Assembly: GCA_026770705.1 (NCBI GenBank)
Contig: JANJGN010000052.1
Location: 1,860,001 to 1,924,000, forward strand
Direction of reading: 5' to 3'
DNA: 64,000 bases
Origin: Isurus oxyrinchus
Lineage: Eukaryota
Position 1 is the first letter of the stretch. Every line of letters begins with the position of its first letter. Under the pieces are notes generated by a model. That model worked only from the letters and a program-made list of their open reading frames with translations. It did no database searches and was not told the origin of the DNA. Shown in pieces: positions 30,551 to 59,435 of this stretch. The position numbers and the translations under genes are program-made.

Positions 30551-30636
30551 TGTTTGTTGGTTTTATATCTTGAGTCTATGAGTTCACTGGTTGATTAAAT
30601 TCGAATTGCACTCCTTCACATACACTTGTTAGTTGA

Positions 30637-30840: not shown

Positions 30841-31109
30841 TCTTAGCTGATGCTCGCTATCAATAACCAAGAGAGACCGACATTAGAACAAGCTGATTAT
30901 TTATTGTAACAGAGGGCAGAGCACTAAATCCTTGCCTGCTCCCACAGCCACCTCCAGCTCTAGACTTACAGTTAACCAGTGGCCCACACTGTCCAGTGAT
31001 TGGTCAGTACTGTCACATGGTTTATCCACTTGTATTCTCTTAAAGGTACCTGGCACTCCACATTATCACAGGAGGCCTATAGTACACACATAACAGCGTT
31101 TTTGCCTCC

Positions 31110-31450
31110 TCAGCACTGACCCTTCTACAGTGCAGCACTCCCTCATTACTGTCTCTCTAATAGTATAATGATCCCTCAGTAGTGCTCCTCCAACATTGCA
31201 CTGGTCAATCAGAACTGACGCTCTGACTGTGCAGTTTTACCTCAGCAGTAACCCTCCTACAGTGCAGCACTCCCACAGTACTGTCCCTCCTACAGTGCTG
31301 CACTCCCTCAGGACTGACCCTCTGACAGTGCAGCACTCCCTCAGCACTGAACCTCTGGCAGTGCAGCACTCCCTCAGTACTGACTCTCTGACAGTGCAGC
31401 ACTCCCTCAGTACTGACCCTCTGACAGTGCAGCACGCCCTCAATACTGAA
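31110..31450 (+). repeat. 33-bp minisatellite (CCCTCCGACAGTGCAGCACTCCCTCAGTACTGA-type)
   Basis: Tandem degenerate copies. Confidence 0.85.
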
Positions 31451-31581
31451 CTGAAGTGTCTGCCTGGATTACGGACTATGTGGTGAAAGAACCTACATTG
31501 ACATCACACCTTTCACATTCTCAGTGTCTTTCAAAGTGCTTCACAGTCAGTGTAAGTTAACTGATCTGTATTTGTTTTTAG

Positions 31582-31863
31582 ACGCACCACGGAATCTCTC
31601 AATTACTTCTCCAGATATGATTAACGCTTCATCGATCAATATAATTGAGGGGAATTCTACAGTGATAATCTGCTCTGTCGAGAGCTTCCCAGCTTCTAAC
31701 CTGATGTGGCGACATCTTAATGTCCCAATGAACAGAACAAGTTCCAACAATGAGCTGTGGTTGGTGATTCCTCACGTTACATCCAGGGATACTGGAGAAT
31801 ATCAGTGTGTGGCAGAGAATGAACATGGAGCAGTGGAGGGGTTCCTAACCATTACTGTGGAAT
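31582..31863 (+). CDS. Gene A C2/I-set Ig exon 2 (DAPRNLSI...LTITVE)
   Basis: 282 nt, phase 1-1, TAG|..T|GTGAGT. IICSVESFPAS..W..DTGEYQCVAENEHG. Confidence 0.9.
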
Positions 31864-33528
31864 GTGAGTGTACACAGACTTTAAAATTTCTCTCATCTCC
31901 GAACACATATACTCAGATGCTCTCCCACGCACACACACACAAGCACTCACAAATGTACAGACCCAAAGTGCATGCACACACACAATCCCACACTCATGAG
32001 CACACAGAAAGACACACTCACACACAAACTCAGTACTGCACTGGAGAGTTCTCCTGGATTCTGGGATATGTGTTCCCATTCATATTTATCGAAGAATATC
32101 CAAATTACAAAGTGTATTCCAGAAACTCACATGCACAAAGATTCCAACTGATACTCCCCACCTCTCTGTGTATCTCTCTCTTCCTTTAAGAAGCTTCCTA
32201 ATCCGTAACTCTTGCCTGTCCTAACTCCTCCTTATAAGTCCCTGTGTCAAATTTTTTGTGTATCTGAGAGAAAGGGAGAGATAAGGAAGTTTAGGAAGGG
32301 ATTTCCTGTTAGTGAAGAGCTTACTTCTTTTTCTCACCTTTCCAGTGTTCAGTTTTGCCATCATGTCCAATGACCCTGTTTATAATGGGGGCATCCTATG
32401 TAAACGTCACACTGTCTTTACATCCTCCCATCAGTGGTGGCACTGTGGTGCTTAAGCTTGCACCTCCCAGCTTTTCAGCCAACTTCACTTCACAATTTGC
32501 TACATATGGTGTAAGTTCATCGAAATTAACATATATCAAATGGTAGATTTGATAATACAGTTTATTGAAAGGTTCATCCGCGCTCTGGGAAGGGTTTACA
32601 CTCTCCAGGAAGCAGGAATAGGCTGGATGTTGGGGAGTTCATCTTTTCCCAGAGAGTAGGGATCCTCGGGAATGTGCTGTCAGTGGGTGTGGTGGTTGCT
32701 GTCTCTCTGTCACCTTCAAGAGGGATCTGGAGTGGTTACTGACTGGGGGAGAGATCATGGAAGCGGAGAATGATACAGCACAGGAGGAGGCCATTCAGCC
32801 CATTGTGCCTGTGCCAGGTCTTTCAATGTTCTATCCAATCAGATCCACTAACCACCACTCCACTTTGCCCCCATCTTCTTCCTTCAAGTGTTTATCCAAT
32901 TTCCCATTTGAAAGTTCCTGTTGAATCTGCTTCCACTGCCCTTTCAGGCAGCACCTTCCAGATCACAACAACTCGCTCTGTCAAAACAAATTCTCCTCAT
33001 CTCCCCCTCCGGTTCATCAATCTGTGTCCCTCTGGTTACCGACCCTCCTGCCCCTTAAATACATCGATACTGTTCACCTCGACCACTCCCAGTGGGAGCG
33101 AGTTCCACATTCTCCCCTCTCTCTGGGTAAAGATTGGAACTGTTTATTAAGCGGGGGGTGTAAGTTCATGGGGGAGTCCATCTCGATCCTGCTTGATTTG
33201 CACACGCGTCCGAGATGGATTTCCACCCTGCACTAAACGTTTCCAGAATTTTCTACAGCACAATCCTGTACACAGCGATGGAGAGAAACATTGGACAGGG
33301 AGTCCAACAGCACAATGATCCATTCTCACCAATGTTCCACGCTAAGGGGAAAGTTCCGATTGTCCACTCTTAGAGTGTTTACAATGAAAACATTCATTCC
33401 ACATTGAATCCCAGTGGATGGGTCAATATTACAGCAAATGTTGCAGTGATATGAAGCTTGATTGTTCAGCCAGAGTGAGAGATTGAAAGCGGAGAGTCAG
33501 TGATGATTTCTTTCTGTGTGTTCTCTAG

Positions 33529-33668
33529 ACAGTGGAGGAGAGATTCTGCACGTGATCCTGATCCTGGGAATACGAGCTGTGATATTCCTTGTGGCTGTGG
33601 TTATCACTATCGCTGGAGTCTGTGTCTGGGAGAGACAAACAGTGAAAGGAAGTCGACAGACTGTTTGA
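33529..33668 (+). CDS. Gene A TM + short tail exon: (Y)SGGEILHVILILGIRAVIFLVAVVITIAGVCVWERQTVKGSRQTV*
   Basis: Acceptor ttctctag at 33528, phase 1 in frame with C2 exon 2. Hydrophobic stretch with CGA (Arg) at 33573-33575, stop TGA at 33666-33668. Confidence 0.85.
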
Positions 33669-33769
33669 AGCTTTGTACAGCAACAATCTGGTCAGTCAGT
33701 GCGGACAAATAACGTGTGATGTTGGGTTAAATTGTAAAGAAACTGGTCAGTGTCCTGGTTAGAATCACC

Positions 33770-34390
33770 TTCGTATCAGAGAGGCATTCCAGCACAGTGG
33801 GAGCCCATTGAGCCCATTGAGTCCATGCTGTCTCTCTGTAGAGCAATCCAGTCAGTCCCATTCCCCCGCTCTATCCCTGTATCCCTGTGAGTTTATTTCC
33901 CCTCAAGTGTCCATCCAATTTCCTTTTGAAATCGTTCATCGTCTCCACTTCCACCATCCTCGTAGGCAGCGAATTCCAGCTCATTACCACTTGCTGTGGA
34001 GAAAAGTTCGTCCTCACATCCCCCTCTGCCCAAAACCTTCAATCTGTGTCCCCCAGTCCTTGTACCATCAGCTAATGGCAACAGCTTGTCTTTGTCTACA
34101 TTATCTAAACCCATCATCATCTTGTACACCTCGATCAGATCCCCCCTCAATCTCCTTTGCTCCAAGGAGAACAACCCCAGCTTCTCCAACCCAACCTTGT
34201 AGCTAAAATCCCTCATCCCTGGACCCATTCTGCTCAATCTCCTCCCCACCCTCTCAAGGACCCTCACTTCCTTCCCAAAGTGGGGAGACCAGAACTGGAC
34301 ACAATATTCTAGTTGTGACCTAACCAGAGCTTTATAAATGTTCAGCATAACCTCCCTGTGTTTGTATTCAATCCCTCGATTTATGAAAAG
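33770..34390 (-). mobile_element. CR1 3' fragment, antisense, in the putative 3' UTR of gene A
   Basis: YKALVRSQLEYCVQFWSP..LGLFSLEQRRLRGDLIEVYK. Duplicate at ~46805-47420. Confidence 0.85.
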
Positions 34391-34744
34391 CTTATTCTTT
34401 CCATCAGCACAAACAGCAATTTCCAAGCGGACTCCCATCAGCAGACAGAGTGCAATGAAACATCGGCATGCCTGCTTCTTAATGTACGGAGAGAAACCTG
34501 CAACGAGAGATTCTCCTTCTTCTCCTCAGCAAGCTGAAACTTTTCCTTATACCTGGTGCTCCCCAGTCCTGCTGTGTGGACACATCATAACCACGGCATT
34601 GTCTGGCTGTGTGCAGCCAACATGGTCGAATAGGAATGAACAGAAATGTGACATTGCTAAACTCTGTTCTCTGATTGGAATGTGCTTTCTGAATGCTGCA
34701 CCTTTTTCATGCTGCGATAGATTGTAAGAAGCATTTGGGTTATG

Positions 34745-34750
34745 AATAAA
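34745..34750 (+). terminator. Candidate poly(A) signal of gene A
   Basis: AATAAA ~1.1 kb after the stop, retained in the gene C duplicate (~47777). Confidence 0.35.
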
Positions 34751-35092
34751 ATTACATTGATTAACACAAGTGATTAAAATGCTCAGCCTGTTCTGTAGAT
34801 ACTTATGGATTAAAATTCTTATTTTGCTGCCAGATTCTTGGCTCAAAGACATTACTTCATGTTGTCACTTTTTCCAGTCAGATGAATTCCTGTGCCCATC
34901 TTTGTAATGGAAATTTTCAATGTAAACACGTCACATAGCAGCTGCACACAATTGCCAGTGGGTGGTGTGATATCAAAGCTGTCTTGCTGCTCAGAAAGAG
35001 AGAGAAATATTCCTGATAAATGCATGAACTTCATGTGTGCATCAGACACTGACATCAGATGCAATTTTGTGCAATTTATGCAATGTATTTTA

Positions 35093-36030
35093 GACAGTGC
35101 AGCACTCCCTCTGTTCAGACCCTCCAGCAGTGCAGCATTCCCTCAGTTCAGACCCTCCAGCAGTGCAGCACTCCTTCAGATCAGACCCTCCAACAGTGCA
35201 GCACTCCCTCAGTTTAGACCCTCCAACAGTGCAGCACTCCCTCAGTTTAGACCCTCCAGCAGTGCAGCATTCCCTCAGTTCAGACCCTCCAGCAGTGCAG
35301 CACTCCCTCAGTTCAGACCCTCCAACAGTGCAGCACTCCCTCAGTTCAGACCCTCCAGCAGTGCAGCACTCCCTCAGTTCAGACCTTCTGACAGTGCAGC
35401 ACTCCCTCAGTTCAGACCCTCCAGCAGTGCAGCACTCCCTCAGTTTAGACCCTCCAGCAGTGCAGCATTCCCTCAGTTCAGACCCTCCAGCAGTGCAGCA
35501 CTCCCTCAGTTCAGACCCTCCAACAGTGCAGCACTCCCTCAGTTCAGACCCTCCAGCAGTGCAGCACTCCCTCAGTTCAGACCTTCTGACAGTGCAGCAC
35601 TCCCTCAGTTCAGACCCTCCAGCAGTGCAGCACTCCCTCAGTTTATACCTTCCAACAGTGCAGCACTCCCTCAGTTCAGACCTTCCGACACTGCAGCACT
35701 CCCTCAGTTTAGACCCTCCAGCAGTGCAGCACTCCCTCAGTTCAGACCCTCCAACGGGTGCAGCACTCTCTCAGTTTAGACCCTCCAACAGTGCAGCACT
35801 CCCTCAGTTCTGACCGGCCGACAGTGCAGCACTCCCTCAGTGCCAACACTCTGACAGTGCAGAACTCCCTCACAGCTGTCCCTCAAACAGAGCAGCACTC
35901 CCTCGCTGCTTATCCTCCATCAGTGCAGCACACCTCAATACTGACGCGCCAACAGTGCAGCACTCCCTCAGTACTGACCCTCTGACAGGGTAGCACTCCA
36001 ACAATACTGACCCTCCGACAGTGCAGAACA
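35093..36030 (+). repeat. 33-bp minisatellite array (CAGTTCAGA variant)
   Basis: More than 20 tandem copies. Source of the spurious 295-aa and 238-aa ORFs. Confidence 0.95.
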
Positions 36031-36693
36031 TGCTTAGTATTTCTCCTCCAACAGCATTTTTAAATATAAACCCTCAGAGCCATGGTAGAAATTTGAAGTT
36101 AACAAACAGCAAACAGAAAGATCACAGAGTCATGATGAATTGCCAACAGTTTGATTCTGTTGTAACGCATTGTGAAATTACGCACTCATTCCTAATGCCT
36201 GTTTACTCACTCCTTTACTACTTCCTCATTTTGTCTCACAGAGACACATCAACCCTTTCTCATTAAATACACAGAGGGGGCAGCACAGGAAGAGGTCATT
36301 CAGCCCAAGCAGAGCGTGTGGGCAGTTCCTCCCCAGGCGAGCAGTCGGACAGGTCCTGGGTAAGTAACGGAACGATTGGAATTCACTTCCACGACCAACA
36401 CCGTCCTTTGTTGATGTTGTGACTTAATAAAGACAGATTCCAATGATTGATGCCTTTGAAAGATTTCTACTGATTATTGAGATCAGGGTGTGAGGCTCAA
36501 GTCTGTTGTACAGAAAATCTTTCTAGCTCAAGGGATGAGGGAAGTGCAGAGACATGAGCTTGGGGGCGTCCTGAGGTGGTGAAAGGTGCTATAGAAATGC
36601 AAGTCTTTCATTGTTTTTCTTTCTTAAAGCCTTGTAACTCTCTGCAGAGCAACTATCATCCCACAGAGAATCAAATTAGTCTGTGAAGACATT

Positions 36694-37330
36694 GGGCTGA
36701 ATTTCCAGCCTGTCGAGCGGGTGGGCCTGACCCAATCTCCAGCGGGCGGGGAGCCAATCCCCACCGGAGAAGCGGGACCCGCCGCCATTTTAAGTGGGCG
36801 TGCCAATTAAGGCCCACCCAGCGTGATGTCCGGCGGGAAGGGCTATGCCCTTCCTGTGTGGGCCGGGGGTGGGGGGTGGGGGTGGGGACATTCCCCAAAT
36901 GCGTGAGTGCGCTCTGTCACACATGCGCATGATAAAGCCCACATCACCCTGAGGCTAAGTGCTGCCTCAGGGAGATCGCTGAAAGGTTTTCAAACAATCA
37001 AAATAGAAAAATAAAAAAATCCTCAACATGTCCCCCTCACATGACAATGTCACGCTAGATGGGACATGTTAATAAACTGCACCAAAACTTGAATAAACTC
37101 TTTTAAAACCGACATGAGTCCTCGTCCCGCCGGTGGATGAGGTTTCATGTTTTCTCTAGTTGTCGCTGGAGCTCCTGCCCTGCCCACCAGCCTTAAGGTT
37201 AGACCGGCAGGTCGGTTCATTGTTTAAATGTTCCTGTCAATGTCTTCAATTGGCCATTGACAGGTCGGCAGGCCCACAGCTGATTTCACTGCACCCCTGC
37301 CCCCTGCTCACCGACAGCGAAACTCTGCCC
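36694..37330. mobile_element. MITE / non-autonomous DNA transposon (PIF/Harbinger-like termini)
   Basis: Absent from paralogous introns (gaagacATTgtct). Imperfect TIRs GGGCTGAATTTC / GAAACTCTGCCC; ATT duplicated at both ends. Confidence 0.75.
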
Positions 37331-37719
37331 ATTGTCTAAAAGCAGTTCTGATCTCTGGAGAGCTGTCGGACAAGAGGTGAGGTCTCATTAACTCCTTTCT
37401 TTTTCACAGCTTGAGAGTGAGAAGCTGATGAAATATCTGCGAGTGGACAATGATCTTACTTCCTCCTGTCACTTCTCCAAGGTAATATCATCGTCAGCTC
37501 GGACAGATTTATGGTTAATAGTCTTTGTAAAAGATCATTCTTATTGAGCTGTGATTGGGAACCGATTCAGCAGTGAGCCAGTGTACAAACTCACACCAAG
37601 TCCCATTCACCCATCACCCCTGTGATCACTGATATACACTGACTCCCTGTCTGACAGCAACAGAAAATTAAAATCCAGGTCATCCTGTAGAAATCCCTCC
37701 AAAATTTTGCAACTCTCCC

Positions 37720-38125
37720 TATCCATGTTACCTCCTCCAGCCCATACCAACCTCCCTATCTCTGTAACATCTTCCAGCACATATATTACTCCCTACCTCT
37801 GTAACCTCGCCCTGCTCCTACAATCCTCCCTATCTCAGTAACCTCCTCCAGCCCCTACCACTCTCCCTAACTCTATAACCAACTCCAGCCCCTATATCCT
37901 TCGCTATCTCTGTTAATTTCTCCAGCCCCTACAAACCTCCCTTTCTCTGTAACCTCGTCCACCATTACAACCCTCCCTATTTCTGTAATCTCCTCCAGTA
38001 CCTACAACCCTCCGAGATCTCTGCACTCCTCCAATTCCAGCATCTTGACCATCCCCCGATTCCCAACATTCCATTATTGGCGGCCGTGCCTTCAGCTGCC
38101 TGGGCCCCGAGCTCTGGAATTCAAA
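37720..38125 (+). repeat. 37-bp L2-tail-derived minisatellite
   Basis: CCTACAACCCTCCCTATCTCTGTAACCTCCTCCAGCC repeats followed by L2 tail sequence. Confidence 0.8.
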
Positions 38126-39029
38126 ATCAAAATTCAGGGATGAATAAACTCCAATAGTCCATTCCCTGAGAGGCCATGATTACATCACAGCAGCATTCAG
38201 AATAGACAGAGGGTCCAGCCCTCACACTTCTTGCACAGTTTCACCATAATGAAATGAATTAACTGAAAGGTAAACCGTCAGTGTAGAGAGATGAGATATT
38301 TACACAGTTTCCCTGTGTATCTTGTAGACACTGTGTTGGGTGGAAGACTGGCTTCACTAAACAGGGTCCTGAGGACCATGAGCCAATGTAGAATGAAGTT
38401 GTCCACTCCTGTGTCCAGGATTCTCTTCCATCCATTGTGAAAACTTGGGGAGTTCCTTGTGTGTCCTGTAGATGGTCCACACTGCAGCCACTGTGCCCCA
38501 GTGATGGAAGGGGTGGATATCGAGTCTAGTGAAGCTACAAAACATCCAGAGTTAAATATTGATATTTCTCTCCCCAGTTGGACTGTCACAAGAGTGGAAA
38601 GGTGACACTCCACGAGAGGTGATAGCGCAGGAATATTCGTGTGTACAGATTCCATGTCATTACAGCTACCCATCGTGTCTGGAAAACCAACTGCAAATTG
38701 GAATCTGATTTAATGACAAAGTCTTGATAAGATTCTTTATAGCCTTTCACTCCAAGGATAATAATCGCGAGTTACCACTGTTCCAACATCGGACCCGGCT
38801 GTCTGGAGACCTGAAAGATGGTGACTGTTCCCTGATTATAAACAACATCAGACGGGAAGATGCAGGACCTCATTTTTTCAGCATAAAATTTGACAATGGT
38901 CCGAGCCATAACTATTACCCTGTAACCCAGCTTCACGTTTCTGGTAAGTGCTGTGTTATAATTACTCAACAATTCACATTCAACACTCAATGGGAATGAA
39001 CACAAACTCTGACGTTTACATAATAACAC

Positions 39030-39753
39030 TGTTATGACATGGCAGGTGATGTGTGCCAAGTGGAGAGAATCCACAAAGGGAACTTGGCCAAGCATAATTT
39101 CCAACTACACACCCCCTTGAAGGCAACAATCCCAATAAATCTTAAATGGAAATGGGAATCCGGCAAGGTTACTGCAGCACCCACTTGACAGTGTAATTCC
39201 AAAGTCTTTTAACACACCTTTAAGTACTGGAGCAGCAAAAGTGAACAGAAACGTTTTACCCAAGGCTGCTTCACCTACTGTACCTTTCAAGAAATTCATG
39301 TCCCCCTCCCACATAACATTCCATCCTTCTTTATGTTGGTTTCTCTCTCTCCAATGTATAAAATCCCATTGTTGCACCTTTCTTGGGAAATACACTTTTC
39401 CCAAAATATAAAAATCTTTCGTGTTGTCAATATGGCCCATTCCTTTTGGGAAGAATACACATAATAACCTTGCCCTGGTTATCTTGTTAATTATAAACAC
39501 CCAACTACCCTTTGACAATCAAACATTCTCTTTACTGATCTAAAATTTCATTTACAGCTTTTCTGTGGAACCCTCATCCTAGCTCGTCCATCCCCATTTC
39601 AGAAGTCTGCTTTGCACCAAACTCTATTGATAATTTTAACCTCATAGTTGATCTGACTCAAATTCAATTAAATCAGACCCACAGACGGAACCATCCACAT
39701 TCATTCCCATAAGCCGACAATATTATTCTGAAAAATATCATAGTTTCATCACA
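39030..39753. mobile_element. Solo LTR in the gene B V-C2 intron
   Basis: TGTTATGAC..TCATCACA termini with acac/acat flanks. Interrupts sequence that is contiguous downstream of the other V exons. Confidence 0.65.
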
Positions 39754-40504
39754 ACATAAAACACAGTTTAGTATAACGCAGAGTCTGATTCTCAATAACC
39801 TGGTGATAGCTTCCATTCAGTCCAAAAGCAACCTCTAATACTCACTTTAATATCAATGATTAAATGTATTGAATGTGTCCATCAATGTTATCAGGTCATC
39901 CACTCCCATCTATCTCTAATCTTAAGGCTGTGATTTCTATTTGAACTGATGCTTCACGTTATATTTCTCTAAAAGGATCCATTCTCTGTCTGTTAGATTT
40001 CACAGATAAACCCACGATATTCCCTGCTGAAATTATTGCAGGAAAGCGTGTGGATGTAAGCTGCACCTTCAACACAACGTGCAATGGAACAGCAGCACCT
40101 GTCTTAACCTGGGACACTCCCACTGACGTACCTGGATCAGTCTCAAACACTGTAACTCAGCATGATGTCACTCTGACCTATACTTCTGTTCTGACCCTGA
40201 TCCCATCACACAAACACCACGGACACACTCTCAGCTGCAGAGTGAGATATCCATCTGTTTCATCGGAGCGGACCCTCGTACTAACTGTGCAAGGTAAGAA
40301 CGGACACCCTTCATTATACATTCGCTGGAACAGTCTAGATGACGCACAGCCGGATCCCATAGAAAGGTATTCTGATGACAATCAGATAATCTGTTTTTTA
40401 AAGAAAATGGTGACCAGAATACAATTAATAACAGTTTCTGAACATTAACATAGGGGCTTTTATGTCCAGCCAAGGGGCTGATAGAGCAGAGCAGGAATCG
40501 CAAT

Positions 40505-41172
40505 GTACTCACCCCCTGACAGTGCAGCACTCCCTCAGTACTGACCCTCTGACAGTGCAGCACGCCCTCAATACTGAACCTCTGACAGTACAACACTCCC
40601 TCAGTACTGACCCTCCGACAGTGCAGCACTCCCTCAGTACTGACCCTCTGACAGTGCAGCGCTCTCTCAGTACTGACCCTCCAACAGTACAACACTCCGT
40701 CAGTACTGACCCTCCGACAGTGCGGCACACCCTCAGGACTGACCCACCGACAGTGCAGCACTCCATCAGTACTGACCCTCCAACAGTGCAACAATTCCTC
40801 AGTACTGTCCCTCTGACAGTGCAACACTCCCTCAAAACTGTCTCTCCGACAGATTAGCACTCCCTCAATACTGTCCCTCTAACAGTGTAGCACTCCCTCA
40901 GTACTGACCTTCCGAGAGCGCAGCACCCCCTCAATACTGACCCTCTGACAGTGTAGCACTCCCTCAGTACTGATCCTCCGAAAGTGCAGCACTCCCTCAG
41001 TACTGTCCCTCTGACAGTGTAGCACTCCCTCAGTACTGACCCTCCGACAGTGCAGCACTCCCTCAGTACTGTCCCTCTGACAGTGTAGCACTCCCTCAGT
41101 ACTGACCCTCTGACAGTGCAGCACTCGTTCAGTCCTGACCCTCTGACAGTGCAGCACTCCCTCAGTACTGAC
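40505..41172 (+). repeat. 33-bp minisatellite array
   Basis: About 20 tandem copies. Confidence 0.95.
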
Positions 41173-41411
41173 ACTGGGGAATTTCAGTCTACTCTGTGGG
41201 GCAGGCATCTCCTGAATGGGGTCTTGAACCCCAGAAAATTCTACAACATACTGACTCCCTGAGTTCGGGTGTGAAACCCACTGACCCACAGGAGAAACTC
41301 CTGGTTAATGACTGTCCATCAGTGAGCAGAAATATCACCACAGGGTCAGGACACAAAGCGTTAACAGTTCACCAACATCTCAAAACATGAGCTGCTCTGT
41401 CACTTTGATCC

Positions 41412-44400
41412 AACTTCCTCATTTTGTCTCACAGAGACACATCAACCCTTTCTCATTAAATACACAGAGGGAGCAGCACAGGAAGAGGTCATTCAGCCCA
41501 AGCAGAGCGTGTGGGCAGTTCCTCCCCAGGTGAGCAGTCAGACAGGTCCTGGGTAAGTAACGGAACGATTGGAATTCACTTCCACGACCAACACCGTCCT
41601 TTGTTGATGTTGTGACTTTATAAAGACAGATTCCAATGATTGATGCCTTTGAAAGATTTCTATGATTATTGAGATCTGGGTGTGAGGCTCAAGTCTGTTG
41701 TACAGAAAATCTTTCTAGCTCAAGGGATGAGGGAACTGTAGATACTTTGGGATGCCCTGATGTGGTGAATGGTGCTATAGAAATGCAAGTCCTTTGTTGT
41801 TTTTCATTCTTAAAGCCTTGTAACTCTCTGCAGAACACCTATCATCCCACAGAGAATCAAATTATTCTGTGAAGACATTGTCTAAGAGCATTTCTGATCT
41901 CTCGAGAGCTGGTGGACAAGAGGTGAGGTCTCATTAACTCCTTTCCCTTTCAGAGTTTCAGAGTGAGAAGCTGATGAAATATCTGGGAGTGGATAATGAT
42001 TGGAAAATCTTACTTCCTCCTGTCACTTCTCCAAGGTAATATCATCGACAGCTCGGTCAGATTTATGGTTAATAGCCTTTGTAAAAGATCATTCTTATTG
42101 AACTGTGATTGGGAACCGATTCAGCAGTGAGCCAGTGTACAAACTCACACCAAGTCCCATTCACCTATCAACCCTAAACTATCTGACTCCTGGTCCTACA
42201 ACATCTCAAACTTAAAATTCACATCTCTTTGTTCAAATGCATCCATTGCCTCACACTGCCTCCTTATCTCTGTAACCTCCTGCAACTCTCCCAACCAACG
42301 TCCCAGATCTCTGTGTTACTCCAATTCCGGCCACTTGACAATCCCCCGATTCCCATCACTCCAATACTGGCGGCCGGGCCTTCAGCTGCCTGGGGCCTGA
42401 GCTCTGGAATTCACTCCCTAAAGCTCGGGATGTAGGAGATCAGAGGGTTTCATTTTACTGAAAATCACCACGACCACATCACAGCTGCAGTCAGAATAGA
42501 CAGAGAGTCCAGCCCTCGCACTTCCTGCACAGTTTCACCATAGCAACCACAATAAGGAAGTAAAATAACTGAAAGTTAAACCGAAGCTCAACCAGTCAGT
42601 GTAGAGAGATGAGATATTTACACAGTTTCCCTGTGTGTCTTGTAGACACTGTGTTGGGTGGAAGACTGGCTTCACTAAACAGGGTCCTGAGGACCATGAG
42701 CCAATGTAGAATGAACTTGTCCATTCCTGTGTCCAGGATTCTCTTCTATCCATTGTGAAACACTGGGGAGATCCCTGTGTGTCCTGTAGATGGTCCACAC
42801 TGCAGCCACTGTGCCCCAGTGATGGAGGGGGTGGATATCGAGTCTAGTGGATCTACAAACCATCCAGAGTTAAATATTGATACTTCTCTCCCCAGTTGGA
42901 CTGTCACAAGAGTGGAAAGGTGACAGTCCCCGAGAGGTGACAGCGCAGGAAGGTTCGTGTGTACAGATTCCATGTCATTACAGTTATCCAGCACATTTGG
43001 AAAATCAACCGCGAGGTGAAGTCTGGTTTAATAATGAGAATCAGATTCCCTGGGCTCCCATTGCCTTTCACTCCAAGGATCACAGTCACGAGTTACCATG
43101 GTTCCACCATCGGACCCGGCTGTCTGGAGACCTGAAAGATGGCGACTGTTCCCTGATTATAAACAACATCAGATGGGAAGATGCAGGACCTTATTTTTTC
43201 AGAATAAAATTTGACAATGGTCGAGCCATAACTATTACCCTGTAACCCAGCTTCATGTTTCTGGTAAGTGCTGTGTTATAATTACTCAACAATTCACATT
43301 CAACACTCAATGGGAAATAACACAAAGTGTGACGTTTACATATTAACACAAAACACAGCTTATTATAACACACTGTCTGATTCTCAATAACCTGGTGATA
43401 GCTTCCAGTTCAGTCCGAAAGCAACGTCTAATACTCACTTTAATATCAATGATGAAAAGCATTAACTGTATTATCAGGTTATCCACTCCCATCAATCTCT
43501 CCTGTCCTGTTTAAAAGTCTGACGTATCGATAAAAGAAAGATGTGCATTTCTGCAGCGCAATTTACCACCTCAGGAGGATCCAAATCCATTCACAGCCAA
43601 TGAAATTATTCCTGAATTGTAGTCACAGATGTTAAACACAGCAGGCAGTTTGTGCACAGCAAGATCCAACAAACCACAAGGTGATAAATCACCCAGATCA
43701 CTGAGGAAATTAGAAGCCAGTGAACTCAAACCTCTGGTCTGATGAAGAGTCATACGGACTCGAAACGTTAACCCTGTCTTCCTCTCCACTGATACTGTCA
43801 GACCTGCTGAGTCTTTCCAGCAATTTTTGTTTTTGTTTCAGATTTCCAGCATCCGCAGTATTCTGCTTTTAACTCCAATCTCTGGTCTGAGCCTCTTCTC
43901 TCATCCAGTGTTCTCAATTCACATGTCTCGGAGTGAACGTGTATTAAGCTGAGAGACAGAAACACTACTGCCAAAGAGCAAGAAAATCTTTCCTGATCAT
44001 TGTAACCTCTCAGTTCTGATATCATCCTTGTAAAAGTGCTTTCTCTTGTGGGACTGTGATATCTATTTGAACTGATGCTTCACGTTATATTTCTCTAAAA
44101 GGATCCATTCTCTGTCTGTTAGATTTCACAGATAAACCCACGATATTCCCTGCTGAAATTATTGCAGGAAAGCGTATGGATGTAAGCTGCACCTTCAACA
44201 CAACGTGCAATGGAACAGCAGCACCTGTCTTAACCTGGGACACTCCCACTGACGTACCTGGATCAGTCTCATACACTGTAACTCAGCATGGTGTCACTCT
44301 GACCTATACTTGTGTTCTGACCCTGATCCCATCACTCAAACACCACGGACACACTCTCAGCTGCAGAGTGAGATATCCATCTGTTTCATCGGAGCGGACC

Positions 44401-46701
44401 CTCGTACTAACTGTGCAAGGTAATTACATACACCTTTCATTCTACATCAGCACTCCCTCAGCGCTGACCCTCTGACAGTGCAGCCCGTTCTCAGTATCCA
44501 CATTCTAAGGCCTCTCTAAGTGCTTCAAAGTCGATAGAAGTTAATTGATCTTTATTTGATTATTGCTGAATGAAGAGACAAGCTGTCTAAACTTTACATC
44601 TCGCACACACCATTCTCCATGGCAACACCTCCACCTATCAGAGACCACTTGCCAACCAATCAGCACTCTCTTCCCATTAAGTATAAATTGTTGTTCATTT
44701 TCTGTTGGTAATCCTGTGAACGGGCTTCTTGATTCCTGCCCTGACATCTTAATGTCCCAATGAACAGAACAACTTCCAACAATGAGCTGTGGTTGGTGAT
44801 TCCTCACATTACATCCAGGGACACTGGAGACTATCAGTGTGTGGCAGAGAATGAACATGGAGCAGTGGAGGGATTCATAACCATCACTGTGGAACGTGAG
44901 TGTACACAGACTTCAACATCTCTCTCAGATTCGAACACGACACAAACAACCTCAAACATACACATCTAAGTAGACACATGCAGACACACATATATGAGCA
45001 CACAGAAAGACACACTCACACACAAACACACTAACACACACTCCCCTGTGGGCTACCTGACCTCCCTCAGTACTGCCCTGGAGAGTTGGCCTGAATTCTG
45101 GGATTTGTGTTCCCATTCATATTTATGCAAGAATATGGAAATTACAAAGTCTATTACAGACAGTCAGATGCATAGAGACACTCACAGATACTCTCTGCCT
45201 CTCCAACTCTCTCTCTCCCTTTAAGAAGCTTCCTGAAAGCTCACCCTTCGAACAATCACCGGTCCCAAATCCTCCTTATCTGATTTGTGTGATTTTCTTT
45301 GTGTATTTGAGAGTAAGAGAGGTGGAGAGGTTTAGGAGGAGAATTCCTGTTGGTGAAAAGCTTACATCATGTTCTCACCTTTCCAGTGCCCATATTTCAC
45401 ATGATGTCCAATGTCCTTGTTCATAATGGGAATTGCCTATGTAAACATCACGCTGTAGTTACAGTCTCCTACCAGTGGTGGCATTGTAGCACTTAATCCT
45501 TGTGTTTCCCAGCTTTTCAAGCAACTCCACTTCCCAGTTTGCTCCACAAGCTGTGAGTTCATTGGAATTCAATTATTTCTCAAACGGTAGATTTGATGTC
45601 ATTTTATTGAAATGCCTCCCTGAAGGGTTTACACTCTCTGGGAAGCAGGAATAGGCTGGATGTTGGGGAGTTCATCTTTTCCCAGAGAGCAGTGATCCTC
45701 GGGAATGTGCTGTCAGTGGGTGTGGTGGTTCCTGTTTCTCTGTCGCCTTCAAGAGGGATCTGGAGTCGTTACTGACTGGGGGAGAGATCATGGAAACGGA
45801 GAATGATACAGCACAGGAGGAGGCCATTCAGTCCATTGTGCCTGTGCCAGGTCTTTCAATGTTCTATCCAATCAGATCCACTAACCACAATTCCAATTTG
45901 TCGCCATCTTCCTCCTTTAAGTATTTATCCAATTTCCCTTTTGAAAGTTCCTATTGAATCTGCTTCCACCGCCCTTTCAGGCAGCACCTTCCAGATCACA
46001 ACAACTCGCTCTGTCAAAACAAATTCTCCTCATCTCCCCCTCCGGTTCGTCAATCTGTGTCCCTCTGGTTACCGAGCCTCCTGCCCCTTAAGTACATTGA
46101 TACTGTTCACCTCAACCACTCCCTGTGGGAGCGAGTTCCACATTCTCCCCTCTCTCTGGGTAAAGATTGGAACTGTTTATTAAGCGGGGGGTGTAAGTCC
46201 TTGGGGGAGTCCATCTCGATCCTGCCCGATTCGCACACGCGTCCGAGATGGATTTCCACCCTGCACAAAACGTTTCCAGAATTTTCTACAGCACAATCCT
46301 GTACACAGCGATTGGGAGAAACATTGGACAGGGAGTCCAACAGCACAATGATCCATTCTCACCAATGTTCCACGCTAAGGGGAAAGTTCCGATTGTCCAC
46401 TCTTAGAGTGTTTACAATGAAAACATTCATTCCACATTGAATCCCAGTGGATGGGTCAATATTACAGCAAATGTTGCAGTGATATGAAGCTTGATTGTTC
46501 AGCCAGAGTAAGAGATTGAAAGCGGAGAGTCAGTGATGATTTCTTTCTGTGTGTTCTCTAGACAGTGGAGGAGAGATTCTGCACGTGATCCTGATCCTGG
46601 GAATACGAGCTGTGATATTCCTTGTGGCTGTGGTTATCACTATCGCTGGAGTCTGTGTCTGGGAGAGACAAACAGTGAAAGGAAGTCGACAGACTGTTTG
46701 A
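41412..46701 (+). pseudogene. Siglec-like gene C (probable pseudogene): exon 0 ends 41552, leader 41996-42035, V 42896-43263, C2-1 44123-44419, C2-2 remnant 44743-44895, TM 46562-46701
   Basis: V exon is 368 nt (1-nt deletion, aatggtCgag vs aatggtCCgag, near 43222). The 5' half and acceptor of C2-2 are replaced by foreign sequence. Leader, C2-1 and TM exons are intact. Confidence 0.8.
43736..43773 (+). ncRNA. Minimal type-I hammerhead ribozyme motif within a Penelope-like fragment
   Basis: GGT-CTGATGA-A-GAGTC(ATACG)GACTC-GAAAC-GTTA-ACC: canonical core boxes, 5-bp stem II, short stem I. Confidence 0.6.
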
Positions 46702-54355: not shown

Positions 54356-54657
54356 CGTGAGGTGAATAGTGTCGATGTATTTAAGGGGAAGCTGGATAAA
54401 CACACGAGGGAGAAATGAATAGAAGGATATGGTGATGGGGTGAGATGGAGAAGGGGTGGGCGGAGACTCGTGTGGAGCAGAAACTCCAGCATGGAACAGA
54501 TGGGCCGAATGGCTTCTTTCCCTGCTGTAAAACGCAGGTAAAGTTTCAGTTGGAATTAATGAACAGGGCCTGTGTGAAATAGATTGCTAAGCAGTAGATA
54601 AGGAGGGGAGAGGCTGTGGCATGGTGCAGGATGACCTTGCGTGAATGAGGCCAGGGT

Positions 54658-54774
54658 CTAATATCTACAGCAGAGACCACAAGTCTCATTTGGTTCTCTC
54701 CAATTACAGCAGTTACAGCAGAATCTGCAGAGCTGCTGTCTGCTCATTCTGTTCTGGCGCTGCAGCAAGGAGCC
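54658..54774 (-). CDS. HAMP: Hepcidin-like exon 3: GSLLQRQNR/MSRQQLCRFCCNCCNWREPNETCGLCCRY*
   Basis: Acceptor cttttccag, phase 0. Eight-Cys hepcidin pattern C-x2-CC-x-CC-xn-C-G-x-CC, preceded by R-x-x-R; TAG stop. Confidence 0.9.
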   Translation of the reverse strand, partial: GSLLQRQNRMSRQQLCRFCCNCCNWREPNETCGLCCRY

Positions 54775-54864
54775 CTGGAAAAGCAGGAGCACAATAGGTG
54801 AGAACATTCCGGAAAGAAAGAAGGCATCATTTCAATCAGGCGCGTCATTGGAAGGAGGATGGCG

Positions 54865-55590
54865 CATTTCTATAGCGCCTTTCCCCTCCTCGGGATGGCC
54901 CAAAGTGTTCCACAGCTGAAGGAAGGACTTTTTCTGAAGTGAGCTCACCGCTGTAATGTAGGAAACGCAGCAGGCAATTCACGCACAGCAAGATCCCACA
55001 AACAGAAATGTGATAATGGCCCCGATTTTCAGTTTTTTACCAATGTCAGTTGAGGGATAAATGTTTGCCCCAGGAAAGCAGACATAACTCCACCCCATCC
55101 AGCCCCCACCACCCCCTCCACACATAACCCCAACTCCTGACGCACTTCATTTAAATTGTGGCCATGGAATCCCCTACATCCATCTGAGAGGGCAGATGTT
55201 GTCTCAGTTTAACATCTCATCTGAAAGACAGCGCCTTCAACAGTGCAGCATCCCCTCAGTACTGACCCTCCGACTGTGCAGCACTCCCTCAGTACTGACC
55301 GTCTGACAATGCAGCACCCCCTCAGTACTGACCCTCCGACTGTGCAGTCCCCCGCCGGGACTGACCCTCTGACAGTGCAGCACTCCAAGACTGACCGTCT
55401 GACAATGCAGCACCCCCTCAGTACTGACCCTCCGACTGTCCTGCCCCCCCGCCGGTACTGACCCTCCGACAGCTCGGTAATTTCTCAATTACGCCTGGTG
55501 GTCCTTTTAACTCAGAGCTGAGAGTTGCAGAGAATCGAGCAGACACCCTGAACTGACACTTGCAGTGCAAGTACTGGGAGCGCGCTGGTC
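54865..55590 (-). mobile_element. DeuSINE (SacSINE1/AmnSINE1-like) with internal 33-bp expansion
   Basis: Reverse complement of Deu-domain sequence (..tctgccctctcagatggatg..atttatccctcaac..). Other copies at ~57325-57980 (-) and ~63250-63530 (+). Confidence 0.65.
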
Positions 55591-57167
55591 ATTATCATGC
55601 TGCTGTCTGTGGGATCTTACAGTACGCCAATGGCTGATTCTTTTCCCACAGTACATCAGTGACCTCACATGAAAGAAAAAAAGCACTTGATTGTCTGCGA
55701 AACAGTTTGGGACGTCCTGATGTGTTGGAAGGCGCTAGAGAAATGCAAGAGTTGACGTTTCGAGTCCTCATGACCCTTCTGAGGACTCGAAACGTCAACT
55801 CTTTTCTTCTCCGCCGATGCTGCCAGACCTGCTGAGTTTTTTCAGGTAATTCTGTTTTTGTTTTGGATTTCCAGCATCCGCAGTTTTCTTTGTTTTTATA
55901 GAGAAATGCAAGTCCTCTTTGTCTTTCACTCGATCCTCTAAGGTGTCTGTTGATTAACCAGCCTCTCGGTGTATGATGTAGGCCTGGTTATAAACAGTTA
56001 GAAGGATCAAATATCAAAAGTGCTTTGGCTGACAGTCAAACCGATTGTGCATTCGGAGAGATTAGATACGGTCTGCACACAATGACTCCAGTCTCTGGCA
56101 CTGACTGCCGCCTGGGGTCTCCCTTCCACATAACACTCACAACTTGCATTTACACAGCGCCTCTGACATTGCAAAATGTCCCAGCCCACATTACCGGAGC
56201 GTAAATCAGAGAGAAGTCTAACACTGAGTCACATATGGAGATATTAGGGATAGGTGACCAAAAGCTTGGTCAAAGATGTCAGTTTTTAAGGAGCGTCTTA
56301 AAGGAGAGAGAGAGAGAGAGGCAGAGAGGTTAAGGGAGGGTATTCCGGAGCTCAGGGCCCCAGGCAGCTGAAGGCACGGCCGCCAATGGTGGAGCGATGG
56401 GAATCAGGGGGACCCGGGAGATGCAGTAATTTCAGAGATTTTGGAGGAACATCGGGACCGGAGGAGGTGTTCTCCTGCTCCATATCTCTCTCTCTCTTCC
56501 TCTCATCCACTCCTCCTCTCCCTGTCTCTCTCTCTCCTACTCTTCCGCTCAATTGCCCTCTCTCCCAATCTTTCTCTCCTCTCTCCCTTTTCCTGTCTCT
56601 CTCCCTCTCTCTCCCCTGTCTCCTTCTCCCACTCTGTATCTCTCCCTCTCTCTCACACTATTTTTGTACCTTTCGCTCACTCTGTAACTCTCCCTTCCCT
56701 GTTAATTTCTCTCTCTTGGACAATCTCTCTTCCCTTTTCACTTTCCCTCACTCTGCATCTCTTTAATTTCTCCCTCTGTCACTCTCTCCCACCTATGTTC
56801 TTTCCCTTTCACCCCTCCCCGTCCCACTCTCTGTCTCTCTCTTCCAATCCCTCCCTCCCCCATTCCATCCCTCTCTCCGACTCTCGACTCCCAGCCTCTC
56901 TTTTTACCCACTCCCAGGCTGGATCAGTCTCCCTCTCACTATTCCCGGCGTGGGTTACATTTAAAATTCCTGTGGGGATATGTTCACTTCCTTGGAATTG
57001 CCTCTTCCCAGCTTTGCAAAAAAAGTTGGGGGGGGGCTCGATTTCAAACCTGCCTCCTGAGTATAACCGAGACAGACTGCCACTGAAATCAGCTTGAAAT
57101 CAGAAAACTTTCTGTGGAAGAAACGAGCAGGGAGAAACCTTAAAATAAGGAATGAATTTCCACCTAC

Positions 57168-57224
57168 CGTGTCCGGGGAATCCACAGATTTCTCAATCGT
57201 CGAAGAACCTAAAGCAGTGTCAAC
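57168..57224 (-). CDS. HAMP: Hepcidin-like exon 2 (propeptide VDTALGSSTIEKSVDSPDT)
   Basis: 57 nt, phase 0-0, ctttctttttgcag| ... |GTAGGT. Size and phase match hepcidin exon 2. Confidence 0.75.
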
Positions 57225-58049
57225 CTGCAAAAAGAAAGAATTTATCAGGGAGAAAGTGAGAGGAGGATTGAGGGAGAGGGAGAGAGAGAGAGAGAGGTAC
57301 AGGAGAGAGAGGGGGAGGAGGACAGACTTGCATTTCTCTAACGCCTTTCACCACATCCCAAAGCATTTCACAGCCACTGAAGGATGTTTTTGAAGTGCAC
57401 TCACACTGTAGGAAATGTGGCAGCTGATTTGTGCACAGCAAGATCCCACAAATAGCAATGTGATCATGGCCTAGATCATCTGTTTTTGGTGATGTTGGTT
57501 GAGGGATAAATATTGGTCCCAGGACACCGGGGAGAACTCCCCCTGCTCTTCCTCCAAATAGTGGCTGTGGGATCTTTCACACCCGCCCGAGAGGGCAGAC
57601 GGGGGACTCGGTTTAGTGTCTCATTCAACATTGTTGTGCTCCCTCAGTACTAACCCTTTGACACTGCAGCACTCCCTTAGTATTAACCCTTCGATAGTGC
57701 TGCACTCCCACAGTATTGTCCCTCCGTCAGTGCAGCTCTATTTCAGTACTAACCCTTTGACACTGCAGCACTCCCTCAGTACTAACCCTTCGATAGTGCT
57801 GCACTCCCACAGTATTGTCCCTCCGTCAGTGCAGCGCTCCCTCAGTACTGACCCTCCGACACAGCAGCACTCCCTCAGTACTGACCTCCGACAGTATAGC
57901 ACTCACTCAGTACTGTCCCTCCAATAGTGCAACACTTCCACACTACTGACCCTCTGACAGTGCAGCACTCCCTCAGCACGGAGTGTTGACCGACGTTATG
58001 GGACTGAATTCCCTGGAGTGAGACTCAGACCAGAGATTTAGGTGGGGTT

Positions 58050-58860
58050 GTTCCGGCTGGAGGAGGTTACAGAGATAGGGAGGGTTGTAGAGGCTGTAGG
58101 AGGTAACAGAGATAGGGAGGGTTCTAGAGGCTGTAGGAGGTTACAGAGATAGGGAGGGTTGTAGGGGCTGTAGGAGGTTACAGAGATAGGGAGGTGTGTA
58201 GGGGCTGTAGGAGGTTAAAGAGATGGGGGGGTTGTGGGGGCTGGAGGAGGTTACAGAGGTAGGGAGGGTTGTAGAGGCTGGAGGAGGTTACCAAAATAGA
58301 TACTGTTGTAGGGGCCACAGTAGGTTACAGAGATAGGGAGAGTTATAGTGTGGAGAGGACGTTATAGAGTTCATGAGCATTGTAGGGGCTGGAGGAGGTT
58401 ACAGTGATTCTGAGGGTCGTGGGGCCTGGAGGAGGTTACAGAGATAGGGAGGGTTGTAGGGTCTGGAGGAGGTTACAGAGATAGGGAGGGTTGTAGGGTC
58501 TGGAGCAGGTTACAGAGATAGGGAGGGTTGTAGGGTCTAGAGGAGGTTACAGTGATCATGAGGGTTGTGGGGCCTGGGGGAGGTTACAGAGATAGGTAGG
58601 GTTGTAGGTGCTGGAGGAGGTTACAGAGATAGGGAGGTTTATAGGGGCTGGAGGAGGTTACAGAGATAGGGAGGGTTGTAGGGGCTGGAGGAGGTTACGG
58701 AGATAGGGAGTGTTGTAGGGGCTGGAGGAGGTAACAGAGATAGGGACAGTTGTAGGGGCTGGAGGAAGTTACAGAGATAGGGAGGGTTGTAGGGGCTGGA
58801 GGAGGTTACAGATATAGGGAGGGTTGTAGCGGCTGGAGGAGGTTACAGAGATAGGGAGTG
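58050..58860 (-). repeat. 37-bp L2-derived minisatellite array
   Basis: GGAGGAGGTTACAGAGATAGGGAGGGTTGTAGGGGCT tandem, about 20 copies. Confidence 0.95.
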
Positions 58861-59059
58861 GCTGAGGAGGGATTGAAAACAAGAATGAGAATTTCAGGGG
58901 AAACGACAGAAGGAAATGATGTTAAATTCATAGAGGGCGATAATATTAAAGGCACGAACATAATAATATCAAACTGCGGAAGTGACCAGTCTATCTGGGT
59001 GGTAGACGTAGAGTCATGTGCAAGAAACACCTCACCCAGAGGGACATCTCTTAGCTTAC

Positions 59060-59152
59060 CCTCGACAAGGAGAAGAAGTGACTCAGCTGCAGGGAGAGCA
59101 GCAAAGTCAGAGTGAACAAGACAAGTCGCCATTTCATCTGGGAGCTTCCCAT
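59060..59152 (-). CDS. HAMP: Hepcidin-like exon 1 (signal peptide MGSSQMKWRLVLFTLTLLLSLQLSHFFSLSR)
   Basis: In-frame ATGs at 59152 and 59137, hydrophobic core, phase-0 donor AGG|GTAAGC, TATA box upstream. Confidence 0.82.
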
Positions 59153-59223
59153 CTCTGCCTGTCTCTTCTGATCTTCTGGCTCTGCTTTGATGCTTTGGTT
59201 TGTAACTAGAGGAGCTTCCTGCT

Positions 59224-59435
59224 CTTATACCTGAAACACTTGAAGGGGACAGCCGGGGGCGGGTTGCTGTGTGGTATCACACCCATTTCTGGATATTGCA
59301 GTGTCGATGTTCCCTGTCCCACTGGCCTGGGACCAGCAGTAAGGTCACTGGGACATTGACTGTCTGGCGCCGAGAACTATCAGTCCCTCCGCAACGCCCT
59401 TCACCTTGTGCAAATATGTGTTCATATTGACGCAA
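59224..59435 (-). promoter_or_regulatory. Hepcidin-like promoter: TATA (59224-59229), GC box (~59255-59263), BMP-RE-like GGCGCC (59366-59371) with adjacent AGAC, C/EBP-like TTGCACAA (59406-59413)
   Basis: Motifs read directly on the - strand, upstream of exon 1. Confidence 0.6.

What the first reader, a model, noticed from the sequence alone, without database searches (positions are those of the whole stretch)
54658..59152. Hidden three-exon hepcidin-like gene in an apparent cartilaginous-fish genome
Seen: minus-strand coding exons of 93, 57 and 117 nt, all phase 0, give an 88-aa signal-pro-mature peptide ending CRFCCNCC..CGLCCRY. The spliced gene is invisible to the ORF track. Known: hepcidins have three exons, phase-0 introns, a furin site and eight Cys. 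My recollection, not verified, is that hepcidin is poorly documented in chondrichthyans, so this could bear on the gnathostome origin of the hormone/antimicrobial peptide.
Basis: partly seen in the sequence, partly recalled or inferred. Interest (0 to 1): 0.85.

Follow-up and report, generated by a model that had tools for sequence, protein, structure and literature searches.

The report
Expressed atypical shark hepcidin gene copy
This is a real, intact three-exon hepcidin-family gene beside Siglec immune-receptor genes. Its exon junctions are found in very abundant spliced RNA, but the peptide lacks the usual iron-hormone N-terminus and has a doubled loop, so it is probably a diverged sister copy.

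Summary
Minus-strand exons 59152-59060, 57224-57168 and 54774-54658 are open, all phase 0 and flanked by GT-AG. They encode 31 + 19 + 38 residues.

- **Family:** the last exon alone passes Pfam Hepcidin (32.5 bits, cut-off 27). It carries the only C-x2-CC-x-CC-xn-C-x2-CC pattern in 64 kb; 100 random windows gave none.
- **RNA:** contigs of one public run join the exons at exactly the predicted junctions. Exon depth is 100 to 1000 times intron depth.
- **Context:** the gene lies among Siglec-type V-set exons, as HAMP lies beside MAG and CD22 in mammals.

The "gnathostome origin" significance does not hold. A nurse-shark hepcidin protein is already published, and earlier work of this scan found many such copies elsewhere in this genome.

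The peptide is atypical. It has Arg-Gln where hepcidin hormones have His plus a hydrophobic residue, an 8-residue loop instead of 4-5, and an N-E-T sequon. The same run holds a contig reading H-L-S-I-C-M-Y-C-C-G, a standard-type paralogue. The deepest junction contig differs from this copy by one base, so expression of this particular copy is not proven.

Most likely this is a diverged, possibly defence-type hepcidin paralogue. No function was tested.

The parts
59406..59413 (-). TTGCACAA, a C/EBP-like octamer 261 nt before the ATG (motif match only)
   Evidence: such patterns occur about 0.4 per kb in the window, so this is weak
59366..59371 (.). GGCGCC, the same hexamer as the BMP-responsive element of mammalian HAMP promoters, 219 nt before the ATG
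   Evidence: only two GGCGCC sites in 64 kb (50984 and 59366). The function is inferred, not tested
59224..59229 (-). TATAAG box, about 30 nt before the inferred transcription start
   Evidence: RNA depth falls from 276,913 (59076-59242) to 3,444 (59243-59400) in run X1
59153..59200 (-). 5' UTR (start approximate), with no upstream ATG
   Evidence: depth step
59060..59152 (-). Exon 1 coding part, 31 aa: a basic start (K7, R9), then a hydrophobic core LVLFTLTLLL, which looks like a signal peptide
   Evidence: Kyte-Doolittle 9-mer maximum 2.73 at residues 10-19; no signal-peptide predictor was available
57225..59059 (-). Intron 1 (GT..AG, phase 0), filled with a 37-nt tandem array (21.8 copies) and 33-nt SINE-like arrays
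   Evidence: joint 57224->59060 in 11 contigs of X1, depth 10,779
57168..57224 (-). Exon 2, 19 aa of acidic/polar pro-region
   Evidence: both junctions seen in RNA contigs
54775..57167 (-). Intron 2 (GT..AG, phase 0)
   Evidence: joint 54774->57168 in 9 contigs, depth 2,475. One further contig, depth 13,928, has A for G at 57169
55829..55983 (-). Minor cassette exon of 155 nt inside a high-copy hairpin repeat of intron 2; frame-breaking, so probably splicing noise
   Evidence: joints 54773->55828 (depth 510) and 55982->57167 (depth 844); AG and GT flanks read
54658..54774 (-). Exon 3 coding part, 38 aa plus stop: end of the pro-region, overlapping RQNR and RMSR furin-type sites, and the mature peptide
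   Evidence: Pfam PF06446 Hepcidin 32.5 bits against cut-off 27, E 1e-7; PDB sea bass hepcidin 1s6w aligned CRFCCNCC...CG.CCR
54661..54747 (-). Predicted 29-aa mature peptide (after RQNR): 6 residues before Cys1, 8 Cys, 8-residue loop NWREPNET with sequon N-E-T, pI 8.2. The alternative is 26 aa after RMSR
   Evidence: the cleavage site is inferred from its position relative to Cys1
54408..54657 (-). 3' UTR, at least this far. Its end is not determined; the only AATAAA lies at 53765, 892 nt after the stop
   Evidence: depth 828,708 in bin 54400-54566 of X1 and loose ends at 54408
11366..44475 (+). Context: Siglec-type V-set and C2-set exons of neighbouring receptor genes
   Evidence: ORFs; V-set exon 15146-15550 hits Siglec-5/7/8, CD33, MAG and sialoadhesin at E 1e-15 to 1e-12

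Best explanation
This is an intact gene of the hepcidin (HAMP) family. An 88-codon prepropeptide is spread over three phase-0 exons. It would be secreted through the exon-1 signal peptide. A furin-type convertase would cut it at RQNR (or RMSR), releasing a 29-aa (or 26-aa) eight-cysteine hairpin peptide. The gene family is transcribed from a TATA promoter, spliced exactly as predicted, and extremely abundant in at least one public RNA data set. This copy is a diverged paralogue. It keeps the CRFCCNCC...CGLCCRY core, but it has Arg3-Gln4 where iron-regulatory hepcidins have His3 plus a hydrophobic residue. Its hairpin loop is doubled to 8 residues and carries an N-glycosylation sequon. I infer that it acts mainly as a secreted host-defence or otherwise specialised peptide. 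A standard-type paralogue, seen in the same RNA run, would then carry ferroportin control. Shown: gene structure, family membership, splicing and high expression of the family, Siglec neighbourhood. Inferred: cleavage site, secretion, glycosylation, function.
For: Exon structure and splice sites were read directly. Pfam Hepcidin scores above its gathering cut-off on exon 3 alone. The best PDB sequence hits are hepcidins; they are weak (E 0.24 and 9) but align all eight Cys, with a 4-residue insertion in the loop. The Cys pattern is unique in the window and absent from 100 random windows. In run X1 the joints fall at 54774->57168 (9 contigs, plus one very deep contig) and 57224->59060 (11 contigs), with CT..AC on the + strand. 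Exon bins have depth 1.2e5-8.3e5 against 5e2-3e3 in non-repeat intron bins, and depth drops about 80-fold upstream of 59243. For the paralogue reading: a contig fits exon 3 up to codon 11 and then reads H-L-S-I-C-M-Y-C-C-G in frame (table 7). Several contigs cover each junction, and there is a one-base variant at 57169. Earlier notes of this scan report many copies in this genome. Siglec-type V-set neighbours match the HAMP-MAG-CD22 neighbourhood of mammals (the mammalian gene order is from my own knowledge).
Against: Expression of this exact copy is not separated from near-identical paralogues. The deepest exon 2-exon 3 junction contig differs at 57169, and the intron contigs of X1 differ from the window by 0.6-3%. 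X1's kind is only guessed as RNA, and its tissue is hidden. No close protein relative could be retrieved, so conservation of the odd features is untested here. Leu6 and Phe9, also important for ferroportin binding in human hepcidin (my knowledge), are kept. The promoter has a GGCGCC element like the iron-sensing BMP-RE. The net charge is only about +1.4, low for a membrane-active antimicrobial peptide.
Confidence: 0.6

Rival explanations
1. It is an iron-regulatory hepcidin of this animal. Shark ferroportin would accept an Arg3-Gln4 N-terminus, and the long-loop form is simply the lineage's version of the hormone.
For: The family is expressed at very high levels. GGCGCC lies 219 nt before the ATG, one of only two such sites in 64 kb. 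There are six residues before Cys1, and Leu6 and Phe9 are kept.
Against: His3 and the hydrophobic residue 4 are missing. A standard-type H-L-S-I-C-M-Y-C-C-G contig exists in the same run. In teleosts with two hepcidin types, only the type with the conserved N-terminus regulates ferroportin (my knowledge; PMC8235187 says second hepcidin genes are not involved in iron regulation).
Confidence: 0.25
2. This particular copy is a silent or dying recent duplicate. The RNA signal would come from near-identical paralogues elsewhere in the Siglec-hepcidin cluster.
For: The deepest junction contig has a different base at 57169. The intron contigs differ by 0.6-3% from this copy. Earlier notes report truncated and chimeric hepcidin copies in this genome (s1-866030).
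Against: The frame, all four splice sites, the ATG context, the TATA box and all eight Cys are intact. Nine and eleven contigs match this copy's own junction sequences. No exon difference was among the listed 'other letters', though 44 rows were not shown.
Confidence: 0.13
3. It is a chance arrangement of open frames and not a gene.
For: None beyond the short exon lengths.
Against: Pfam E 1e-7; the pattern is absent from 100 random windows; RNA joints fall exactly at the predicted sites.
Confidence: 0.01

Closest known systems
Vertebrate hepcidin / HAMP (Pfam PF06446; human hepcidin-25, PDB 1m4f, 2kef, 6wbv)
   Same: Signal-pro-mature layout; the mature peptide sits at the very C-terminus in the last of three exons; an RxxR site lies 6 residues before Cys1; eight Cys as C-x2-CC-x-CC-...-CG-x-CC-x2; the locus lies beside Siglec genes.
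   Different: Arg3-Gln4 instead of His3-Phe4 (or His3-Leu4 in fish); loop of 8 instead of 4 residues; an N-E-T sequon in the loop; no basic residue at P2 of the cleavage site; one of many copies.
Teleost second-type (HAMP2-like) hepcidins, e.g. hybrid striped bass hepcidin (PDB 1s6w)
   Same: Identical CRFCCNCC block and a CG-x-CCR-aromatic end. It lacks the hormone-type N-terminus, is multi-copy, and co-exists with a standard-type gene.
   Different: Teleost HAMP2 arose within ray-finned fishes (my knowledge), so the likeness would be parallel, not orthology. The bass loop is 5 residues. The charge here is only about +1.4.
Nurse shark hepcidin detected in plasma (PMC9207270)
   Same: A hepcidin protein of a cartilaginous fish, reported there as lacking a whale shark orthologue in the annotation used.
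   Different: Its sequence is not in the text or in the supplement held, so no comparison could be made.

Membership tests
Hepcidin (PF06446) | Profile match at or above Pfam's gathering score | tested here: met
   Exon 3 alone scores 32.5 bits against 27, E 1e-7, profile positions 24-52 of 53
Hepcidin (PF06446) | Eight Cys in the order C-x2-CC-x-CC-loop-C-x2-CC near the C-terminus | tested here: met
   Spacings 2,0,1,0,8,2,0 with two residues after the last Cys. The loop is 8 residues rather than 4-5
Hepcidin (PF06446) | Prepropeptide: signal peptide, pro-region, convertase site RxxR before the mature peptide | tested here: met
   Hydrophobic core in exon 1; RQNR and RMSR in exon 3. Read from the sequence only, with no predictor and no cleavage data
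Hepcidin (PF06446) | Three-exon gene with the mature peptide in exon 3, spliced as such | tested here: met
   GT-AG introns; RNA joints at both predicted junctions
Hepcidin (PF06446) | Conserved neighbourhood (USF2-HAMP-MAG/CD22 in mammals, from my knowledge) | tested here: inconclusive
   Siglec-type V-set exons flank the gene. No USF2 exon was looked for or seen in the window
Iron-regulatory hepcidin (hormone type) | N-terminal ferroportin-binding segment with His3 and a hydrophobic residue 4 (DTHFPIC, QSHLSLC) | tested here: not met
   The N-terminus is M-S-R-Q-Q-L-C after RQNR, or Q-Q-L-C after RMSR
Iron-regulatory hepcidin (hormone type) | Binds ferroportin and lowers iron export; induced by iron through BMP-SMAD signalling | not testable with these tools
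   The only hint is a GGCGCC hexamer 219 nt before the ATG
Defence-type (HAMP2-like) hepcidin | Lacks the hormone N-terminus and co-exists with a standard-type paralogue | tested here: met
   A standard-type reading H-L-S-I-C-M-Y-C-C-G appears in one contig of the same run (table 7). It is a single contig, and the frame is inferred from adjacency
Defence-type (HAMP2-like) hepcidin | Antimicrobial activity; usually a clearly cationic peptide | tested here: inconclusive
   pI 8.2 and charge +1.4 at pH 7; activity was not tested

The most novel reading that the evidence does not exclude
Sharks carry a lineage-specific expansion of long-loop, possibly N-glycosylated hepcidin paralogues scattered through a Siglec receptor cluster. 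These paralogues would be the dominant hepcidin transcripts and would have a function different from both ferroportin control and classical membrane-active killing. They would be a parallel to teleost HAMP2, and perhaps co-duplicated or co-regulated with the receptor genes.
Probability: 0.3. Interest if true: 0.55.

Novelty: new member of a known kind. Interest (0 to 1): 0.4.

Why it matters
The gene shows that the hepcidin architecture (three exons, convertase site, eight-Cys hairpin) and its Siglec neighbourhood are present in this genome, which earlier notes of this scan take for a shark. That fits the view that the hormone and its Cys326 site on ferroportin arose together by the base of jawed vertebrates. 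The more useful point is the split into a standard-type form and a long-loop, His-less form within one animal. This gives an independent test case, outside teleosts, for how a hormone gene spawns defence-type or otherwise specialised copies. [quoted passage not shown]

Tried and rejected
- **Protein representative search:** phmmer of exon 3 against 1.84 billion representatives gave only one 1,442-aa Cys-rich protein at E 3.5e-4. This is uninformative for a 38-aa query.
- **The search for homologous proteins:** I queried the contiguous open frame 54661-54831 (57 aa, so that 31-99-aa proteins were eligible) and scored residues 18-57. No candidate shared three words. This says nothing about annotation, because even teleost CRFCCNCC hepcidins did not surface.
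- **ESM Atlas:** the best score was 0.77, to an unrelated plant cluster.
- **AlphaFold2:** a single-sequence run on the exon-3 peptide gave two helices at pLDDT 68, with no hairpin. I took this as unreliable without an alignment, and ran no fold search.
- **Other scans:** the Rfam scan of the window found nothing. A self-BLAST found no second copy of the exons, promoter or 3' UTR in the window.
- **Nurse-shark supplement:** it does not hold the word hepcidin.
- **Phrase searches:** six phrase searches for shark or cartilaginous-fish hepcidin returned no paper.
- **Left out by instruction:** the joined 88-aa model was not submitted to any tool or script.
- **Rejected readings:** a processed retrogene as the source of the joints, because of the exon/intron depth ratio within one run; and chance.
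Full report
**Observation.**
- Exon 1 is 59152-59060 and reads MGSSQMKWRLVLFTLTLLLSLQLSHFFSLSR.
- Exon 2 is 57224-57168 and reads VDTALGSSTIEKSVDSPDT.
- Exon 3 is 54774-54658 and reads GSLLQRQNRMSRQQLCRFCCNCCNWREPNETCGLCCRY, then a stop.
- The lengths are 93, 57 and 117 nt, so both introns are phase 0.
- The donors are AGG|GTAAGC and ACG|GTAGGT, and both acceptors follow long pyrimidine tracts.
- The start codon has G at -3 and +4. There is no upstream ATG after the TATAAG box at 59229.
- The eight-Cys pattern occurs once in the six-frame translation of the window and never in 100 random windows of the same first-order composition. The DNA pattern for CCxCC also occurs once.
All searches were made exon by exon by reference, and the joined 88-aa step was left out.

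**Family.**
- Exon 3 alone matches Pfam Hepcidin (PF06446) at 32.5 bits, above the curated cut-off of 27, with E 1e-7.
- Against PDB sequences the only hits are hepcidins. Sea bass hepcidin 1s6w shares CRFCCNCC and CG-CCR, and human hepcidin 1m4f also aligns.
- Both alignments place a four-residue insertion in the hairpin loop.
- Exon 1 has a basic start and a hydrophobic core with a 9-mer hydropathy of 2.73, which looks like a signal peptide.
- Two overlapping minimal convertase sites, RQNR and RMSR, precede the Cys core. RQNR leaves six residues before Cys1, the canonical distance, and gives a 29-mer of pI 8.2 and charge +1.4. RMSR gives a 26-mer.

**Transcription and splicing.**
- One search for runs and one laying of contigs were allowed.
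- In run X1 (organism A), contigs skip 54775-57167 and 57225-59059 exactly, with CT..AC on the + strand, which is GT..AG on the gene strand.
- Nine contigs (summed depth 2,475) and eleven contigs (10,779) carry these joints. One further contig has depth 13,928.
- Exon-containing bins have depths of 1.2e5 to 8.3e5. Non-repeat intron bins have 5e2 to 3e3.
- Depth falls from 276,913 to 3,444 just upstream of 59243, which fits a start about 30 nt after the TATA box.
- X1's kind is only a guess in the table. Exact GT-AG skipping and the exon/intron ratio within one run show that it holds spliced RNA.
- Three runs of organism B do not cover the exons, apart from one spliced contig of depth 24 in X5.
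- The 3' UTR runs at least to 54408, and its end was outside the stretch laid. The only AATAAA lies 892 nt after the stop.

**This copy among paralogues.** Four results within one search show that more than one hepcidin sequence is expressed.
- Many contigs cover each junction.
- The deepest exon 2-exon 3 junction contig has A for G at 57169. This changes the last codon of exon 2 from Thr to Met, and the X5 contig shows the same change.
- The unspliced intron contigs of X1 differ from the window by 0.6-3%.
- One contig fits exon 3 up to codon 11 and then continues with 30 letters whose reverse complement reads, in frame, H-L-S-I-C-M-Y-C-C-G. That is a standard-type hepcidin N-terminus with His3 and Leu4.

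The frame of that last contig rests on the loose letters being adjacent to 54742; the hepcidin-like reading itself supports this. Earlier notes of this scan report many hepcidin copies on other pieces of this genome, one of them 590 kb away on the same piece. They also report truncated and chimeric copies and a standard-looking expressed hepcidin. My data agree with that picture but do not count the copies. The consequence is that very high expression of the family, with these junctions, is shown, while expression of this very copy is not separated from its close relatives.

**Neighbourhood.**
- The window's + strand carries repeated V-set and C2-set exons.
- One V-set exon hits Siglec-5, -7, -8, CD33, Siglec-10, MAG and sialoadhesin at E 1e-15 to 1e-12, and it has the FFRxE arginine motif.
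- In mammals HAMP lies next to MAG and CD22 (my knowledge), so the locus is consistent with orthology of the region.
- No second copy of the hepcidin exons, promoter or UTR is present in this window.

**Promoter.** GGCGCC, the core of the BMP-responsive elements of mammalian HAMP (my knowledge), occurs at only two places in 64 kb. One is 219 nt before the ATG. A TTGCACAA C/EBP-like site and a TGACCT half-site lie nearby. These are motif matches and were not tested.

**What it most likely does.**
- The core and the C-terminus are those of a hepcidin hairpin.
- The segment that human hepcidin inserts into ferroportin differs: Arg3-Gln4 replace His3-Phe4 (His3-Leu4 in fish hormone-type hepcidins). 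Leu6 and Phe9 are kept.
- The loop is doubled to NWREPNET and contains an N-E-T sequon ten residues from the C-terminus. Whether it is glycosylated is unknown.
- A standard-type paralogue is expressed in the same run. The simplest reading is therefore a diverged sister copy, functionally parallel to the second hepcidin type of teleosts, which PMC8235187 describes as not involved in iron regulation.
- Its modest charge argues against a strongly membrane-active peptide, so the function could also be something else.
- I give 0.6 to this whole reading, about 0.93 to family membership, 0.25 to an iron-hormone role and 0.13 to a silent duplicate.

**Literature and novelty.**
- Full-text searches found no paper describing a shark hepcidin gene.
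- PMC9207270 reports hepcidin among nurse-shark plasma proteins and notes that it lacked a whale-shark orthologue in the annotation used.
- PMC8235187 states that the ferroportin Cys326 site first appears in cartilaginous fish and that hepcidin has no known antecedent before fish.
- Presence of hepcidin in this lineage is therefore expected and already recorded. Automatic genome annotation probably names such genes, which I could not check.
- The atypical long-loop, His-less form and the multi-copy arrangement are the only fresh aspects, and the scan has already met them on other DNA of this genome.

**Limits.**
- Protein searches gave no usable relatives.
- The single-sequence structure model was not informative.
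- The species and the tissue of the runs are coded.
- The shark origin of the genome rests on earlier notes (NAR-TCR cassettes) and was not tested here.

Noticed in passing
window 54742 (run X1 contig, table 7): A contig shares exon 3 up to codon 11 and then reads H-L-S-I-C-M-Y-C-C-G in frame. This is a standard-type hepcidin paralogue expressed in the same run. Its locus is not in this window.
   Followed up: partly
window 57169: The deepest exon 2-exon 3 junction contig (depth 13,928 in X1, and also one contig in X5 of organism B) has A for G on the + strand. This turns the last codon of exon 2 from Thr to Met, so it comes from another copy or allele.
   Followed up: partly
window 55829-55983 (-): A minor 155-nt cassette exon with AG and GT flanks lies inside a very high-copy hairpin repeat of intron 2. 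It is frame-breaking and has roughly 3-5% of the depth of the main junction.
   Followed up: partly
window 59366-59371: GGCGCC (BMP-RE-like) lies 219 nt before the hepcidin ATG. The only other GGCGCC in 64 kb is at 50984.
   Followed up: partly
window 11366-27125 (+): Seven Siglec-type V-set exons lie in about 2.3-kb tandem units, some identical in protein. Each is overlapped on the opposite strand by a repeated 143-144-aa ORF (MDNCNDMESVH...).
   Followed up: no
window 58055-58858; 57639-57976; 55240-55472: Intron 1 holds a 37-nt tandem array of 21.8 copies. Both introns hold 33-nt arrays of a SINE-like unit (CAGTACTGAGGGAGTGCTGCAC...), which is extremely abundant in all four runs laid.
   Followed up: no
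window 53962-54351: A CA-rich compound tandem array (periods 6 to 64) lies just beyond the proven part of the hepcidin 3' UTR. The first AATAAA comes after it, at 53765.
   Followed up: no
window 29195-30375 (-), 50115-51483 (-): ORFs with reverse-transcriptase-like sequence, probably LINE fragments, lie between the receptor exons and the hepcidin gene.
   Followed up: no
window 34892-35813, 40462-41289, 48099-48867: Long open frames made of 11-residue repeats (PPTVQHSLSSD...) are read in several frames and on both strands. They look like translated tandem DNA repeats, not genes.
   Followed up: no
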